Part shown: positions 53,545 to 61,700 of the stretch, piece after piece | Numbering within the stretch: the stretch's first letter is position 1 | Layout: the number at the start of each line of letters is the position of its first letter | Assembly: GCF_000143415.4 (NCBI RefSeq) | Contig: NW_003314382.1 | Location: 150,210-214,209 of the forward strand | DNA: 64,000 nt | Direction of reading: 5' to 3' | Source of the DNA: Selaginella moellendorffii | Lineage: Eukaryota; Plantae; Lycopodiophyta | Translations under genes and position numbers: made by a program | Notes under the pieces: model-generated | Database searches by the model: none | Seen by the model: the letters and a program-made list of their open reading frames with translations, nothing else | Told to the model about the DNA's origin: nothing

Positions 53545-55290
53545 TGTGTCGTGGACGTTGATGATCGCGGCCTGCGTGGAAGCGGAGTCGCTGCTGGCTC
53601 GGATGCCATACAAGGTCGTGATTGCCGAGACCGTGATCGTGGAATCGCTAGCGAGATCCGGATGTGCGATCGGATGCCACAGCGGAATGTTGTGGCCTAG
53701 AACACAGCTTACACGCGAAGTGGAGACGAGAGTGGAGACCTTGATCGAGCGAGCTTACTGTGTGACGCAATGCCGGAGAAGGATCAAGTGTCCTGGAACA
53801 TCTTGGCGCAGAGGTATGCCTCGGAGTGAAATCTGGCCATGGTGAGGCATTTCTTCAAAGAGAATGCCGAGGAGAGATGTGGTTTCTTGGACCGCGATGC
53901 TCGTCACGCACGCGAGCAGCTGGGAAATCGACAAGGAAATGTTCTTGTTTGAGATTATGCCCGGAAAGGATGTGATCGCCTGGAATATCATGATCGCCGC
54001 CATGCCAGATCGGGAAATCTCCACACTGCCAAGAACCTCTTCGACAGCTCTCCAACGCGGGGCCTGGTTTCTTGGAACATGGCAGTCGAGGCCTACGCCG
54101 AGCACAGCTAGCTCCAAGAAGCGAACTCCCTGTTCGACGCGGAACGCAATTCTCCAAGCGTACTTTCGAGCTCTTCTTCGATCGAATACCGGAACTCGTT
54201 GTAGCGTGGAACAGCGCCATGCAACCGCACGCCGAGCGAGGCCTGCGATTGTTCCACGCAATGCCGGCGTGTCGTCTCCTGGGTGATCCTCGTCTCGCGG
54301 CGGGCACTTAAAAGAAGGGATGTAGTTGACGGGGCCAGGGATTGGAAAGTGGTCACCTGGAACGCCATGCTTGCGTGCTATGGCAGCGCGTGAAATATTC
54401 GATTCCATGGGCGACTCAAGACCTTGCCCTCAGAGAAACCACTTGGAACTTGTTCATGCCGCACATGCCCAATGTTAGGATCCTATCCCTTACACCCTAA
54501 GCCAACTGGCTAAAGGGGTGATCACTTGATTGCAGGGCCCTTTCCTTATCCTATTATCCTGACCTGGTGCCTAACAATCTTCCCTCGTCAGAGAATGATC
54601 GTCCGCGATCATACTTAGGCCACCATCTGGTCACCATGGTCCTTCTCTTAGGGTCTCCCAAACCTTGGTTCTCCCTCTAGATTCACCATGTTAAATATTC
54701 TTTCAGAATATTCTTGCCCCACTCATCAGCCACGAGAATCAAACTAGGCTCCAATACCATTGTTAGGATTCTATCCCTTACACCCTAACCCAACTGGCTA
54801 AAGGGGTGATCACTTGATTGCAGGGCCCTTTCCTTATCCTATTATCCTGACCTGGTGCCTAACACCCAAGATTGGCAAATTGAGGAGCGCGATCCCTGTC
54901 AAGGCCATGGCAGCAGCATGTTTGCAGTTTGGGCGTCTCGAACACAAGATCTTTGAGACAATGCCGGAGAGGAACAGTGTTTCCTGGAACGCAATGCTTC
55001 ATGGCCATGCCAAAAACGCTCATGCTGTAGAAGCCTTGGATCTTTACAAGAGGATGGCGTGTGCCCGATGCCAATTCTCATCGCCAGGCTTGCTCGCTCC
55101 ATCCTTGGTCGCCCCGGCAAGATCCCAGAGACCCAAGAGCTGCTCCACAGCCAACCATGTTGCCTACACTGCTCTTTTAAACTCCTCCAGAAACGCTGCT
55201 CTAGCTTCTTCACTGAGGTCTTCCCCTGTGGATACCATGTATGTTCTGCTGTCCAACTTAGCTGCCCAAAATGCTACTTTTCACATTATT
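53545..55290 (+). pseudogene. PPR pseudogene, third copy of 46004-48073, interrupted by a TRIM
   Basis: Collinear fragments (AESLLARMPYK, MPRRDVVSWTAMLV.HASSWEID, PVDTMYVLLSNLAAQNATFH) with frameshifts. Confidence 0.88.
54473..54864 (-). mobile_element. TRIM (miniature non-autonomous LTR retrotransposon), 392 bp
   Basis: 104-bp LTRs at 54473-54576 and 54761-54864 (TGTTAGG...CCTAACA, 2 mismatches). 5-bp TSD CCCAA on both sides. On the minus strand, tRNA-iMet-like PBS TGGTATTGGAGC and PPT GACGAGGGAAGAT. Confidence 0.92.
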
Positions 55291-56128
55291 GGCTTTACAT
55301 ACCATGCTTCAGCTATAAGTTTTACTTCTGTTTTACGAGAATACCTTGAAGAATTGGCCTCTCATGACTTTGATGAAGGCATGTGTACCTGCGCAGTATC
55401 CTTATTTCTCTTTGCTTATAAATGCTGCATTGAGGTTGGACGGATGCTGAGTGGTAGTTCTGTTTCTTGTTATAATAGGTTCTGGTCTGGTTTGATCAAA
55501 AAACTTCTCTCAACAACGGGAATCGTTCCAGGATGCAGTGTTCATTTCCTCAAAGATCTTGCGTGATTGATCAAGATGCGGGAAAATGCTGCAGCTATGG
55601 TGGTCCAGAATATTACGTCCTTGACAGGAAAGTTTGTAAAGTCTCCTCAAAGTTGCCCACTTTAGGCATGTGCTTTCAATACATGCTTTTGGGGTCTTAT
55701 GCTTTTGAAGCATAAGACCACTAAGAAGAAGAAGGATCGTCTCTACCTCCTACTCTCTCTCTCTCTACACTCTCTTGTGCTTGAGCCGCCCGAATCTCCT
55801 GGTAGATGGCCAAGTAGTGCGAATTTCCAGTCGGGTTTTGAGAAGGCCTTCCACAAGCCTATGACAATCGAAGTTTCACCCGTTCTTTTCAGTAGTTTCG
55901 TAGTTGCATCCCATATTGAACTCTGGTACTTTCTTGACTGGGATGCCAATCGCCTGTAATACCGAGCACACGAAAGTCAAGTAGAGCCCACAATAGGAGA
56001 CACCTTACAGTCATCGCTCACCTTTCGTACAGGCACGTTTCTCCAGGACCAGCTGACTATAAAATACCCACAAAAGCGGGCGAAGGCAAGCATTCTGCTC
56101 ATTCAAGCATCGCTTGTTATCGTCCACA

Positions 56129-56485: not shown

Positions 56486-57673
56486 ACGGTGCAACAAGAT
56501 GTTCCACATAAGATTACATAAATAATGCTCTTGAGGCCTGGAATGCTCTCTTTTTTTTCCCATGCTGCCTTTCCCAAGTTCCAATTTCCAAACCATCCCA
56601 TGGAATGAGTTCCTAGCTTGCCATTGCATGCAGTGTTGCTGCAACTACAGCCCTTATAATCTGCTCTTTGTTGTTCTGGGCTCTTATTCAAAAACAAAGA
56701 TGCAGAAACGAGATGCGCAGGGCCCTCCACAAAGAGTCAGAATACTGCAATTAGACGTCGGGGAGACGCAGTTTTAGCCAAAGTTCAAGCATTTTGTGCG
56801 TTTCATTTTACAAGTTGCAAGTTATGATTTTAAAAGCCAACACTCCATTTCCAGGTGGAGTGCAATTTGTAAACCCCCTTTTCCATGGTGAAAAAGTCAC
56901 GCGGTTTACAAATTGCATACACTGGCACTCGGAAGTCGAAACTTCAGTCGAGGTCTTACCTACCTGCACGGAAAACAGACTTAAAAGATCAAGCCACAAA
57001 GCTGTATATCCCATACTCTAAATTCATACTAAAGGTTATAAACTAAAATATTATTAACTACTACAATTGTCTCCCGTCAATTTTCCTGCGTTTAACAGTG
57101 TTACAAGCAACACAAGAACACTGGGGTGAGAAAGATGCCATTGGAAATTGCTGTATCAAGGATGAATCGCCCATCCAATACCACCGTGGCGAGTGGCAAC
57201 TTTATCCCCTTGAGCAGCAATGACTCGCCTCCCACAATTGACATCCAAAGCTTTGACGAGATGGCACCTCTGACGTTCTTCTATGATCTATGTTGACCTG
57301 GTTTTCACAGGACCCGCATTCTCGAGCCTTACGTTGCTCCTTCCAACAACAGCCACAACATTCCATACTCGAATCCTTTGAGTGTGAGGAACCACACATA
57401 TGATTTCGTGGTCGTCCCACTGGTGAAGCCCATGGACAGCCGTGTCGTCCACTCCCTGGCTGATACCATCCAGCAGTACCCGTTTCGTTCACCACCTCGC
57501 TCCACCAAAAGTAAAAGCTTATACGAATGAATGAAAAATCACCTTTTCCTTTGTTCGAAACCATTCTCCGTCATTTCCTGCTCATTGATCCCACCATGTC
57601 GCTGCACGACGCAAAGATAGCTTAGCAATTTTACATGACAACAGCGCCATTCGTTTTTCCCCTGTCAACTAGT

Positions 57674-59157
57674 TCAGAAAGTGAATACCTTGAAAGAACG
57701 CTCACGGGAAGGTGTGTGTACCATGCGCGGCATCCTTATTTCTGGTCTGCGAGGTCCCCTCCGAGTCGTTCCAATCTTGCTTGTAAACGCGCCATTGGCA
57801 AGCTTATAGAGGTCGGACGGATGCTGAGGTGGGAGCTTTGTTTCTTCGAAGTCCTGCGATGTAGGATTGTTAATCATTTTCTCATAGGTTCTTGCCTGGT
57901 TTGAAGAAAACAACTTTTCTCGCTGCCACAGAAACCTCTGCCGCTCCTCTTCACCAACAGGTTGGAATTTGAGATCACGCTGTGAAAAACTGCCAGGTTC
58001 AATCCCATGCAGAAGCTTCTCAATAATGTCTCTTGCGTCCGTATCGTCCAGATCAGCAAGTGAAGGAGAGTTTTCAATGTTCTCGCGTAGCTGATGGCAG
58101 GCTAATTTTTCAGACAGAGGATACACCTGCGGTCAAACACAAGAGTTTATCTATACCAAAACATGGAAAATAATCAAGTTACCTGAATAATGAAACCTCG
58201 GGCAGTCTTTACAATGTTGTGTTCGTCAAATTTCATAGCTAAGCTAGCTGCTGTATCCATCTGCAAGGATGAAAGACAATGTGTGAAGAAAACAGAGCGA
58301 CCAATCAATATTACCTTCTGGTTTTTCCAAAGAAAATATGCTAAGCTCTCTGCAACTTCACGAGATGGTCCCATCGGGGACCTACAACATGAGAAAGAAC
58401 AGAAGGATAGAAACGAAAATCACTTGCTAGATGGAGCGTACTTACACAAAGGTTCTGTGAGACTTCGATAGGCTTATAGACAGGCGCATGTCACACTCTC
58501 TGACTACCGTGGCCATGATCATCTGAAGATATGACAAATTAAGTTCCATAGTTTTATCAAAGCGGGGACTTACGTTTCCATGAGAACTGTGGCTTAGATT
58601 GTGGACGTGACCCGTCGTGAAACCATCAAATGTAGTGGCCGCATGAACAAATCCAAGACGTCCATCGCATACTGTTGATATCTGACGAAAAACATCATCA
58701 ACTCACCTGCAAACAATGATAGAGAAAGGCAAAACGCATCGCACCGTGATAGCATTCGCGTCGGGAAAAATCGAGCTCAAAAGAACCGATCCCATCATCG
58801 CGTTACCAAGAACGATCGACGACTAAAGGAGAAAAAACAATAACCAATCCAAGAAATGAGCAGGCTCCACATACCATTCGAGAAGTTTGAAGCGTTCTCT
58901 GAGCTTCCCGAACGAGAGCATCGGCTTTGACACTATGAATCTCGATCTAAAATCCTCGTTAGTGTGTTCTTCATTCAATCAATGGTACTGCATACCTCTT
59001 CACTCGAGCTGACGCAGCTAAGAATGTAATCACCACTACCGCTGGAGGAGCAAAAGCCTGCACACAACGTTTGATCCAATCGTCAAGAGTAAAAGCGCTC
59101 GAAGACAAGGAAGCACTCACCCCTTCTCAACGCGAGTAGAGAACGCAACCTGCGCAT
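57674..59157 (-). CDS. Hsp33 (HslO)-like chaperone lacking the C-terminal Zn-binding Cys motif, ~9 exons; may continue by splicing toward ~57200
   Basis: Spliced: MRRLRSLLALRRAVVDYILSCVSSSEEIEIHSVKADALVREAQRTLQTSRMSSIVLGNAMMGSVLLSS...ISTVCDGRLGFVHAATTFDGFTTGHVHN...SREVAESLAYFLWKNQKMDTAASLAM...VKTARGFIIQVYP...LRENIENSP...IIEKLLHG...LKFQ. This is collinear with remembered Hsp33 motifs (DYLV, LV.EAQR, LGR, GEIAEDL.YY, AGGFIIQ.P). Confidence 0.72.
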
Positions 59158-59189
59158 CGCAATATCAAATGGAGACCTAAAACGTGAAT

Positions 59190-59710
59190 ATGCGAGAAGA
59201 AGGTATTTGTGCTCCAATCGATCTTCTCGAGCAGCAAGGCTACCATGCCGATCTCCAGCTCTGCCTCCAGCTCGTCAAATCTTGCGGTCACTCCAGGGAT
59301 CTCTCCCAAGCAAAGAAGCTCCACTCCCAGATCCTTGCAACCAAGCACTCGCGCAATCGGCACCTGGAGAACCTCCTCATCGAGATGTATGGAAAATGCG
59401 GGAGTCTGGAGCGCGCGCGCGCGCTGTTCTTGACGATCTGGAGGAGCCAAACCCCTTCTCCTGGCAGAGCGGGCATCTGGAACAAGCCAAAGAGATCTTC
59501 CAGCGAGATGGCACGGCACAACACCGTCTCCTGGACTGCACTGCTCACCGCGCATTCCCAGAGCGGGACTTTTCAAGAATCCTGGAGCCTGTTCCAATCG
59601 ATGCCCCGGAACAACACCATCGCCTGAAACGCGATGATCGCGATAATCCCTAGCGCGATTGCTCTTCGTCCTGGAATGCGATGCTAACGGCATATTCCAA
59701 GAACGGGCTG
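59190..59710 (+). pseudogene. PPR pseudogene (5' fragment)
   Basis: HLENLLIEMYGKCGS cap followed by a frameshift and early stop. Confidence 0.75.
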
Positions 59711-59719
59711 CATCCTTTT

Positions 59720-61700
59720 GCTACTAACCATGCCTTTTAGTGTTCGATCTCGTTTGACTCCTTGTATTTGAGGTTGTGGATCCACTTACACTTTATAATC
59801 GATGTGCCTGTAGGTATAGACTCCCTAAGAACAAGGCTCCATGCATCATTCTCAAGCTGAGCGTTATACTCGCTTTGCATAGCAGCCTTTCAGTGAAATC
59901 TTTGTGGTCCTCCAAGTACTTCCTGTAAAGTTAGAGGTTCTTGGATAACTTGAGCAACCTAAGCATGATATTGTAGAATATTTCTTGTTGGCTTCTAGGT
60001 TCTGGTTGAGTGATGCTAGGAATCCATTCTCGTTCAAGCTCTATTTGAATAGTTTGTTCAACGTCTTGTTCTTCTATAGAACTTTCAACATAAGAGTACC
60101 TATAGTTAAATCACTATAAGTTGAGGGAAATCTGCTGGCAGTTGTTTTTATCAGTGGAGGTGGTTATGGAGGGAGTGACATCGTTGTTCCTCAAGCTGCC
60201 AAGACACAGTTAGATTGAAGTCTGATAAATACCTAAGTATTAGAACTTCCAATTGAAGTAGAAGTTGAGTATGTAGGGATCATTTCTCTAAAGAGACGAG
60301 TCCTCCAAACTAGGAATTTCTTCTGGCTAAAAACCACACTTGATATCCTTCTTTTGTGGTCTTGCTATAGCCTAGCATCATGTATATAATAGTCCTATCT
60401 TCCCACTTGTTTTGTCTTTGTTCATCAAAGGTATGGGAGTATCCTATACAGCAAAAAGCACGTAAGTAAAAGATGGTTTCATACCTGTCCATAATTCAGA
60501 AGGGGTAGTACATTCTGAATATACTGCAGTATTGACTGCCTCTGCTTATATGAAACATATGCTTTGTGAGAAACATCCAAAATAGTGAGCATCTCTCTCT
60601 ACAACTCCATTTTATTTGTGATCGTATATTTGGAGAGAAACACCTTGAGATGCAAGGATGGTTTGGACCTTTGTAAAAAGTAGTTTTTGGCCTCCATCAA
60701 TATGAAGAATTCAGAGACTATTTGAATGGAATTGTAAAATTTGAGAGGAGTTTATTTTAGGAAGTAAACAAAAGTGTGATGACTGAAGTCATCCACAATT
60801 AGTAAGAAATATTTAGTCTCATTTAAAATCAGATAGACCCTAGATATCTATATGAACTAGTGCTAATAAAAAAGTACCTTGAGTCTTACCTTTTTGGGTT
60901 ATGGCTTCTTCATTTTTGCTTGAAAATATGCATTGCAATCTTCTAGACTTGGTCTTTCCAGTTATGGTATACCATTTAACAGTGCTAGTGTTTGTAACAC
61001 GACAAAAACTTGCATATGTTAATCCATAGTGCCATAATTATAATACAGAATCATTAAATATTGAAATAGTATGAGCTGCCAAAGTATCTAAAGAAACATA
61101 ATAAAGTCCATTTATATATGTAGCCTAAGTTATTTGAGTTTTATTGAAATTGAAATTTGCTCTTGTCCTATGGAAAACCATATAGATTCCTTGTTTTAAA
61201 AGCTTAGAGATATATAAAAGATGACAAATAAGCTTAGGGATATACAAAACATTAGTAATCTTAAGATTTAAAATGGGAAAATAGCTTGTACCAAAAGCAA
61301 TTAATCATAAATCCTCACCACTTTTAGTATTTGTAGACATTGAAAACTTCTTATATTTGCTTTGATAAAAGAGAGTTTTGTCCAATGTTATATGGTGTGT
61401 AGCTTCATATAATTCAAAAACATCTAAGAATTTGGTGGAGCAGTCTCATATGAAATATGTTGTAATGAATGTTATAGGTTTGGATATGTTACAGCCAATT
61501 TTCTAAATTCACAAAGCAATTATAAATGTAAAGGATTAGTTGTCACTTTTATAATAATACACTATAATGAACATGATGATTTTTTGGAAAGTACTTTAAA
61601 CTTTGAGGATTTATCTAGTTTTCATATAGATTATGCTGAGATTGAGAAGTGTCAAAATCTAAGTTGGCTTCTAGATATTATTGGAGAAGTGCTCTGACAT
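59720..61700 (-). mobile_element. Highly degenerate Ty1/Copia retrotransposon relic (protease to integrase region)
   Basis: Minus-strand fragments KYFLLIVDDFSHHTFVYFLK (integrase), LRAFCCIGYSH...KWEDR...MLGYS...GYQVW (integrase C-terminal region) and VLYIPKL (protease region), with many stops. Confidence 0.75.

What the first reader, a model, noticed from the sequence alone, without database searches (positions are those of the whole stretch)
57674..59157. Hidden multi-exon Hsp33-like gene that has lost the whole redox zinc switch
The gene is barely visible in the ORF track. About nine small exons splice in frame through GT-AG sites into a protein collinear with the Hsp33 N-terminal and linker domains. 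Where bacterial Hsp33 has F-x-C-x-C...C-x-x-C, this protein reads LKFQPVGEEERQRF, followed by a Cys-free basic tail. The short Arg/Leu-rich N-terminus resembles a mitochondrial presequence. Established: Hsp33 is switched on by oxidation of its four Zn-binding cysteines, and it is mainly bacterial with a patchy eukaryotic distribution. Inference: a constitutive or differently regulated organellar holdase, or a repurposed Hsp33 fold.
Basis: partly seen in the sequence, partly recalled or inferred. Interest (0 to 1): 0.72.

Follow-up and report, generated by a model that had tools for sequence, protein, structure and literature searches.

The report
Spikemoss Hsp33-like chaperone without zinc switch
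A real, spliced and transcribed Selaginella moellendorffii gene encodes a very divergent Hsp33-type chaperone that keeps the core and linker, but a cysteine-free, probably floppy tail replaces the zinc/cysteine redox switch, so oxidation cannot turn it on as in bacteria.

Summary
On the minus strand at 59157-57539 lies a 10-exon gene (359 codons). All nine GT-AG introns (49-87 nt) appear as spliced joints in assembled RNA contigs of four runs from four studies.

A ninth intron (57688-57602) is removed and a tenth exon adds 20 residues.

The gene is not hidden. It is RefSeq LOC9631900, "uncharacterized protein", of Selaginella moellendorffii, already tagged PF01430.

Pfam HSP33 matches residues 22-248 to profile positions 1-229 of 273 (E=5e-25). 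The last 44 profile positions, which hold CxC...CxxC, are unmatched. Where E. coli reads FKCTCSRER, this protein reads FQPVGEEER.

The 111-residue tail has no Cys, is strongly hydrophilic, and has no relatives outside Selaginella. A Cys-rich extension in the RefSeq model of the other haplotype is not supported. Contigs run unspliced through the stop, and the haplotypes differ there by 1-nt and 8-nt indels.

pN/pS between haplotypes is 0.29.

Constitutive holdase activity and mitochondrial targeting are inferences. Both structure predictions failed.

The scan had already found the other haplotype's copy (s1-334519), with the same verdict.

The parts
59121..59157 (-). Exon 1, ATG at 59157; first 12 codons plus 1 base (MRRLRSLLALRR)
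   Evidence: junction 59121>59057 seen in 4 runs; first ATG after the in-frame stop at 59262-59260
58996..59057 (-). Exon 2 (residues 13-33); the Hsp33 domain starts at residue 22 (DYIL)
58875..58946 (-). Exon 3 (residues 34-57)
58745..58822 (-). Exon 4 (residues 58-83); donor GTGCGA
58574..58681 (-). Exon 5 (residues 84-119)
58446..58522 (-). Exon 6 (residues 120-144 plus 2 bases)
58315..58381 (-). Exon 7 (residues 145-167)
58183..58260 (-). Exon 8 (residues 168-193, ends ..ARGFIIQ)
   Evidence: the ORF that contains it gave a weak Pfam HSP33 hit on its own
57689..58126 (-). Exon 9 (residues 194-339): linker, relic of the CxC strand, and most of the Cys-free tail
   Evidence: contigs run continuously through it in 4 runs
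57602..57688 (-).
   Evidence: joint 57601/57689 in all 4 runs
57539..57601 (-). Exon 10 coding part: 20 Cys-free residues (RHGG...EQRKR) plus stop TGA at 57541-57539
57071..57538 (-). 3'UTR. Contigs of 4 runs run colinear and end at 57071-57076. It differs from the other haplotype by 11 substitutions, a 1-nt indel and an 8-nt indel
57460..57542 (-). Putative 83-nt intron used only by RefSeq models X1/X2 and LOC9639977. It would remove the stop and add a haplotype-specific tail. No joint was seen here
   Evidence: models; no joint, contigs continuous; frameshifting indels downstream
57941..57967 (-). Residues 247-255, FQPVGEEER: relic of the Hsp33 F-x-C-x-C-S-x-E-R strand with Cys>Pro and Cys>Gly
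   Evidence: alignments; the Pfam match ends at residue 248
57962..59031 (-). Span (with introns) that encodes residues 22-248 = Pfam HSP33 profile positions 1-229 (core domain plus linker)
   Evidence: PDB alignments
59032..59157 (-). Span (with intron 1) that encodes residues 1-21, the candidate organellar presequence
   Evidence: 5 Arg, 0 Asp/Glu, 5 Ser; the domain starts at residue 22; targeting itself was not tested

Best explanation
SHOWN. This is an expressed nuclear gene of Selaginella moellendorffii (RefSeq LOC9631900): 10 exons, 359 codons. It encodes a highly divergent member of the Hsp33 (HslO) chaperone family. The N-terminal core and the linker are retained collinearly. The C-terminal zinc-binding redox-switch domain is absent. 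A short relic of its first strand remains (FQPVGEEER where E. coli has FKCTCSRER). After that come about 110 residues that are Cys-free, very hydrophilic, one-third charged, and without relatives outside Selaginella.

INFERRED. The protein is imported into an organelle by a 21-residue Arg/Leu/Ser-rich presequence, with mitochondria favoured. There it acts as an ATP-independent holdase whose activity cannot be gated by Zn release or disulfide formation. In bacterial Hsp33 the folded Zn domain keeps the linker docked over the client-binding surface. Activation is the unfolding of the Zn domain and linker. A copy whose C-terminal part is permanently unfolded should therefore sit in, or close to, the 'on' state. 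Alternatively it may be gated only by heat or unfolding of the linker.
For: Gene structure and expression: nine canonical junctions in contigs of 4 runs from 4 studies, and 20 listed runs from 11 studies hold part of the stretch. Contigs carrying the other haplotype's indels show the same splicing, so both alleles are transcribed. Family: Pfam HSP33 88.9 bits against a cutoff of 21.4, E=5e-25, residues 22-248 = profile 1-229/273; PDB Hsp33 1vq0 at 1.7e-11 and 1vzy at 6.5e-07. Loss of the switch: no Cys after residue 203; the profile's last 44 positions are unmatched. Tail: GRAVY -1.41, 33% charged; exhaustive phmmer of exon 9 against 1.84 billion representatives finds only Selaginella proteins plus one spurious repeat protein. 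Constraint: between haplotypes the CDS has 14 substitutions and no indel, 7 synonymous and 7 non-synonymous, pN/pS 0.29, p=0.02. Introns and the 3'UTR carry indels and have about 1.7 times the substitution rate. Mechanistic precedent: a single mutation that destabilises the linker makes Hsp33 constitutively active (PMC10598452). Algal Hsp33 has lost one Cys and Zn binding and is activated more easily (PMC7423844). A mitochondrion-targeted Hsp33 is predicted in diplonemids (PMC12699882).
Against: No activity, localisation or structure was tested. Both AlphaFold runs failed (mean pLDDT 31 and 32), so neither tail disorder nor core integrity is shown structurally. The score is far below the NCBIfam HslO equivalog cutoff (82.8 against 244 bits), so functional equivalence is not implied. 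No orthologue outside S. moellendorffii was found to show that the Cys-less form is conserved. The pN/pS estimate rests on only 14 differences. Contigs cannot exclude a minor isoform that uses the RefSeq 3' intron.
Confidence: 0.6

Rival explanations
1. The protein is still a thiol-redox-regulated chaperone, but through a different switch built from the remaining cysteines (Cys27, Cys88, Cys129 in the core, Cys203 in the linker) rather than a Zn centre.
For: Four Cys remain in the mature part, one of them in the linker, and all are unchanged between the two haplotypes.
Against: None of them lies in a CxC or CxxC motif or aligns with a conserved Hsp33 cysteine. The two haplotypes are 98% identical, so conservation between them says little. 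No orthologues are available to test conservation.
Confidence: 0.15
2. The gene is a decaying or repurposed relic: an Hsp33 fold that no longer works as a chaperone (neutral drift or a new, unrelated role), transcribed but not functionally an Hsp33.
For: Divergence is extreme. No protein among 5.8 billion clusters shares enough 5-residue words to score even at E<=10 except the species' own copies. E. coli Hsp33 is not detectable by pairwise or low-diversity profile comparison. The score is well below the HslO equivalog cutoff. The other haplotype carries a partial duplicate of the 3' part.
Against: The 10-exon ORF is intact in both haplotypes, with no CDS indel while the flanks have them. pN/pS is 0.29. 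The match to the Pfam profile is near gap-free, 227 residues to 229 positions. All splice sites are kept and used.
Confidence: 0.15
3. A minor splice isoform skips the stop codon (intron 57542-57460) and adds a C-terminal extension. In the other haplotype's RefSeq model this extension contains CCGCC-x10-CGSC, which could bind metal and restore a switch.
For: RefSeq models P0007, P0006 and P0005 use this GT..AG intron. The P0005 tail is Cys-rich.
Against: No joint appears there in any of 4 runs. Contigs of both alleles run straight through the stop. Downstream the haplotypes differ by a 1-nt and an 8-nt indel, so the two predicted tails are unrelated in sequence, and the window's own tail has one Cys and no motif. 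Neither tail matches the HSP33 profile or any other Pfam family. The CxC-to-CxxC spacing of about 10 differs from the roughly 30 residues of the E. coli sequence.
Confidence: 0.05

Closest known systems
Bacterial Hsp33 / HslO (E. coli; T. maritima PDB 1vq0; B. subtilis PDB 1vzy)
   Same: Same family by Pfam PF01430 (E=5e-25). The N-terminal core and linker are collinear up to the Phe that precedes CxC. The Tyr aligned with E. coli Tyr10 and the GFIIQ strand are kept.
   Different: The Zn-binding CxC...CxxC domain is absent and replaced by an unrelated hydrophilic tail. Identity to E. coli is only about 18-21%. The protein has a eukaryotic presequence and its gene has 9 introns. It scores below the HslO equivalog cutoff.
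Chlamydomonas reinhardtii chloroplast HSP33 (Segal and Shapira 2015, as summarised in PMC7423844)
   Same: A eukaryotic, photosynthetic-lineage, organelle-type Hsp33 with a weakened Zn switch. That protein has lost one conserved Cys and Zn binding, and is activated by mild heat or oxidation.
   Different: The alga keeps the C-terminal domain and three of the four Cys. Selaginella has lost all four and the domain itself. Sequence relatedness between the two could not be tested here.
TrypOx, the Hsp33 homologue of Trypanosoma brucei (PMC7423844)
   Same: A divergent eukaryotic Hsp33 homologue with low sequence similarity to bacterial Hsp33.
   Different: TrypOx retains a modular C-terminal redox-switch domain that can replace the E. 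coli domain. The Selaginella protein has none.
Engineered or proteolytic Hsp33 variants with a destabilised linker or no C-terminal domain
   Same: They are functionally analogous in architecture: core plus linker without a folded Zn domain. A linker-destabilising point mutant is constitutively active (PMC10598452). From my own knowledge, not checked here, C-terminally truncated E. coli fragments were reported as constitutively active (Kim et al. 2001).
   Different: Those are laboratory constructs. This is a natural gene kept in both haplotypes, and it carries an added 110-residue tail of its own.
Predicted mitochondrial Hsp33 of diplonemids (PMC12699882)
   Same: It is a precedent for a mitochondrion-targeted Hsp33 in a eukaryote.
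   Different: It belongs to an unrelated lineage, and the state of its Cys motif was not examined here.

Membership tests
Hsp33 family (Pfam PF01430) | Profile match above Pfam's gathering score | tested here: met
   88.9 bits against a cutoff of 21.4, E=5e-25, for P0002:1-260; 88.4, 82.4 and 86.4 bits for P0002, P0001 and P0005
Hsp33 family (Pfam PF01430) | Collinear N-terminal core domain plus linker | tested here: met
   Residues 22-248 map to profile 1-229 in one stretch. The PDB alignments to 1vq0 and 1vzy run from the first strand to the Phe before CxC.
Canonical redox-regulated Hsp33 (HslO) | C-terminal Zn centre Cys-x-Cys...Cys-x-x-Cys | tested here: not met
   No Cys after residue 203. 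Profile positions 230-273 are unmatched. FQPVGEEER aligns with FKCTCSRER. RNA contigs exclude a dominant downstream coding exon.
Canonical redox-regulated Hsp33 (HslO) | NCBIfam equivalog NF001033 score at or above its cutoff | tested here: not met
   82.8 bits against a cutoff of 244
Canonical redox-regulated Hsp33 (HslO) | Oxidation-activated, ATP-independent holdase activity | not testable with these tools
   Needs a biochemical assay
Hsp33 fold | Predicted or solved 3D structure superposes on Hsp33 | tested here: inconclusive
   Two AlphaFold2 runs gave mean pLDDT 31.3 and 32.4. The alignments were too shallow (3 rows) or too uniform (Enterobacteriaceae only), so no fold search was run.
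Mitochondrial matrix protein (N-terminal presequence) | Positively charged, acid-free presequence with an MPP-type cleavage motif, and import shown | tested here: inconclusive
   Residues 1-21 have 5 Arg, 0 Asp/Glu and 5 Ser. The maximal helical hydrophobic moment is modest, 0.56. RGF|CSS resembles the plant -3R motif (my own knowledge). No predictor or localisation data were available.

The most novel reading that the evidence does not exclude
A vascular plant keeps a mitochondrial Hsp33 that evolution has locked in the 'unfolded = active' state. The Zn redox switch was exchanged for a permanently disordered, lineage-specific tail. That would be a natural constitutive, or purely heat- or unfolding-gated, version of a chaperone whose defining property is redox activation. 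It would also be a land-plant Hsp33 in a group that the Hsp33 literature treats as largely lacking the family.
Probability: 0.3. Interest if true: 0.6.

Novelty: new variant of a known kind. Interest (0 to 1): 0.45.

Why it matters
Hsp33 is the textbook redox-switched chaperone. In a survey of 1579 homologues the four-Cys motif was the most conserved feature outside the N-domain, and fewer than 10 sequences lacked even one of the cysteines (PMC7423844).

A natural, expressed, selectively maintained copy with the whole switch domain gone offers two direct tests. One is whether the core plus linker is a constitutive holdase in vivo. The other is what a disordered tail contributes to client binding.

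It also documents an intron-rich, clearly nuclear Hsp33 gene in a vascular plant. This is not a bacterial contaminant, which the few 'higher plant' hits in the literature (Oryza, Ricinus) could be.

The practical gain is modest. The gene is already in the databases as an uncharacterised PF01430 protein, and nothing about its function was measured here.

Tried and rejected
1. Exon-by-exon Pfam and PDB searches by reference were blank, apart from one weak HSP33 hit (E=0.027) on the ORF around exon 8. The pieces are too short for HMMER's filters.
2. tblastn of E. coli Hsp33 against the region gave only noise.
3. hhalign of the Selaginella alignment against 20 Enterobacteriaceae Hsp33 gave the expected register but no significance (probability 0.2%, Neff about 1).
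4. ESM Atlas with exon 9 gave no usable hit. With the whole protein the nearest clusters are bacterial Hsp33 families whose representatives are only 231-259 aa. The score of 0.85 makes this a lead only.
5. Two word-index searches (regions 1-260 and 22-248, the second at E<=10) returned only the species' own three clusters.
6. The genome-contig scan with Selaginella as first row found nothing. With E. coli first it returned only Enterobacteriaceae at 88-100% identity, useless for depth or phylogeny. The metagenome scan found nothing.
7. AlphaFold2 was run twice and gave unusable models.
8. The literature search found no paper that mentions both Hsp33 and Selaginella. A broad plant-term search was uninformative.
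9. The weak Vma12 hit in the tail (E 0.06-0.18) is rejected as chance.
10. The idea that the Cys-rich frame at 57202-57564 is a lost Zn domain is rejected. It lies in the 3'UTR, behind the stop, in a frame reached only in the other haplotype, and has no profile match.
11. The JGI upstream exon (P0008, P0001), the RefSeq X2 skip of exon 4 and the X3 intron inside exon 9 are rejected, because none of those joints appears in the four runs.

Full report
WHAT IS THERE. My protein hits name Selaginella moellendorffii.

On the minus strand I read ten exons from the sequence: E1 59157-59121, E2 59057-58996, E3 58946-58875, E4 58822-58745, E5 58681-58574, E6 58522-58446, E7 58381-58315, E8 58260-58183, E9 58126-57689, and E10 57601-57542 with the stop at 57541-57539. 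All nine introns are 49-87 nt and GT..AG. The CDS is 1077 nt plus the stop, giving 359 codons.

TRANSCRIPT EVIDENCE. One run search listed 20 runs from 11 studies that hold part of the stretch. I laid the contigs of four runs from four different studies on 56900-59800. All nine junctions appear in all four runs, at exactly the predicted borders, as CT..AC on the plus strand.

The runs are only guessed to be RNA, but intron-less contigs with nine canonical joints are what RNA gives. The contigs continue unspliced from 57601 down to 57071-57076, which is the 3'UTR.

Some contigs (X5, X6) carry the other haplotype's 1-nt insertion, and the X5 contig also its 8-nt insertion. They have the same splicing, so both alleles are transcribed.

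Exon 10 adds 20 residues without Cys.

THE RULE ON SPLICED MODELS. Exon-by-exon searches by reference were nearly blank.

It returned only four proteins: three S. moellendorffii gene models, and one unrelated 1598-aa repeat protein at E=9e-06 over 35 residues.

These models, and the cluster members found through them, gave me references for the joined product. RefSeq isoform X1 (P0007) is, over residues 1-358, identical to the ordered exon translations. P0002 residues 1-260 are identical as well.

In one search a script walked codons across exon borders by coordinate, only to class substitutions. No joined sequence was printed, stored or searched.

FAMILY. P0002:1-260 hits Pfam HSP33 at 88.9 bits (cutoff 21.4), E=5e-25, in a single stretch: residues 22-248 to profile positions 1-229 of 273. 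The other haplotype's models give 82-86 bits with the same end point.

NCBIfam's HslO equivalog model matches the same span at 82.8 bits, far below its 244-bit cutoff. PDB sequences of Hsp33 from T. maritima (1vq0, E=1.7e-11) and B. subtilis (1vzy, E=6.5e-07) align from the first strand to the Phe before CxC.

E. coli Hsp33 is too distant for pairwise detection. Even so, MAFFT and hhalign put DLKFQPVGEEER against DVEFKCTCSRER. The first strand of the Zn domain therefore survives as a relic, with Cys>Pro and Cys>Gly.

THE SWITCH IS GONE. Cysteines occur only at residues 15 (presequence), 27, 88, 129 and 203. Residues 249-359 have none.

That tail has GRAVY -1.41, is 33% charged and has 9 Pro in 110 residues. 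It matches no Pfam family and, by the exhaustive search, nothing outside Selaginella.

THE REFSEQ EXTENSION. RefSeq models splice out 57542-57460, which removes the stop, and then read on.

In this haplotype the added tail (P0007) has one Cys and no motif. In the other haplotype (P0005) a different frame yields a Cys-rich string, CCGCC-x10-CGSC.

Three observations argue that this is untranslated. First, no joint exists there in four runs, and contigs of both alleles run through the stop. Second, aligning the window with the allelic locus L002 shows 0 indels in the 1080-nt CDS, but a 1-nt and an 8-nt indel in this extension, so the two predicted tails are unrelated proteins. Third, neither tail has a profile match.

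A minor isoform cannot be excluded from contigs alone.

CONSTRAINT. Between haplotypes the substitution rate is 0.013 in the CDS, 0.022 in introns and 0.024 in the 3'UTR. Of the 14 CDS differences, 7 are synonymous and 7 are not. That gives pN/pS 0.29, one-sided p=0.02. The numbers are small, but the direction is purifying.

RELATIVES. Two word-index searches over 5.8 billion clusters returned only this species' three clusters, even at E<=10. Scans of prokaryotic genomes and JGI metagenomes found nothing close.

So the protein is an isolated, very divergent branch. Whether other lycophytes share it could not be tested, and the same holds for a canonical Hsp33 elsewhere in Selaginella.

The Atlas feature search pointed to bacterial Hsp33 clusters with short representatives (231-259 aa) at a score of 0.85. 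This hints that Zn-domain-less Hsp33 proteins may also exist in bacteria, but it is only a lead.

STRUCTURE. Two AlphaFold2 runs gave mean pLDDT 31 and 32. One used 3 Selaginella rows. The other added 20 Enterobacteriaceae Hsp33 sequences. No fold search was justified. Statements on the fold rest on the profile match, and statements on tail disorder rest on composition.

MECHANISM (INFERENCE). In bacterial Hsp33, oxidation of the four Cys releases Zn. The switch domain then unfolds, the adjacent linker unravels, and the client-binding surfaces are exposed (PMC7423844). One mutation that destabilises the linker makes the protein constitutively active (PMC10598452). Algal Hsp33 that has lost one Cys and Zn binding is activated by mild heat or oxidation.

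A protein with core and linker, but a tail that never folds around Zn, should therefore be constitutively or easily active, and not gated by thiol oxidation.

The Tyr aligned with E. coli Tyr10 is kept. From my own memory, this is the 'Y12' of the constitutive-mutant literature. The linker may therefore still dock, leaving heat or unfolding as a possible gate.

The 21 residues before the domain have 5 Arg, no acidic residue and an RGF|CSS motif. They look more like a short mitochondrial presequence than a plastid one. This rests on general knowledge and was not tested. A mitochondrial Hsp33 is predicted in diplonemids (PMC12699882).

COMPARISON AND VERDICT. By Pfam the protein is a member of the Hsp33 family. 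It fails the defining Zn-centre feature of the canonical redox-regulated HslO, and it fails the equivalog cutoff. I file it as a new variant of a known kind.

The gene is annotated but uncharacterised. I found no paper that mentions Hsp33 together with Selaginella.

The scan had already reported the allelic copy on another scaffold with the same conclusion (s1-334519). My tests agree with it. They add the exon-10 correction, the resolution of the Cys-rich RefSeq tail, and the haplotype constraint estimate.

Noticed in passing
window 59184-59650 (+), 53864-54283 (+), 54814-55563 (+): Fragmentary, frame-broken PPR-repeat ORFs flank the gene on the plus strand (PPR E=1.1e-10). The upstream one starts about 30 bp from the Hsp33-like ATG, head to head. 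A 2917-nt contig in run X1 spans both, so their transcripts probably overlap.
   Followed up: partly
L002:8592-9266 (other haplotype, GL377582.1): A 96%-identical partial duplicate of the gene's 3' part (it matches window 57912-57222) lies 1.9 kb downstream of the allelic gene. It gave rise to the gene model P0003. It is absent from this window.
   Followed up: partly
window 57071-59880, models P0001, P0002, P0006, P0007, P0008: The public gene models disagree with each other and with the RNA contigs. Two JGI models use an upstream exon instead of exon 1, RefSeq X2 skips exon 4, X3 places an intron inside exon 9, and X1/X2 splice out the stop codon. None of these joints appears in the four runs laid.
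   Followed up: yes
window 59342-59667: Non-canonical joints in contigs (59342>59622 with AA..TC ends in 3 runs; 59641>59667 in 1 run), with long loose ends. They are probably contigs of PPR paralogues rather than splicing.
   Followed up: no
ESM Atlas (no window coordinates): The nearest feature-space clusters are bacterial Hsp33-family clusters whose representatives are only 231-259 aa (Myxococcota, Pseudomonadota), too short for a Zn domain. This is a possible bacterial counterpart of switch-less Hsp33, at a score of 0.85 only.
   Followed up: no
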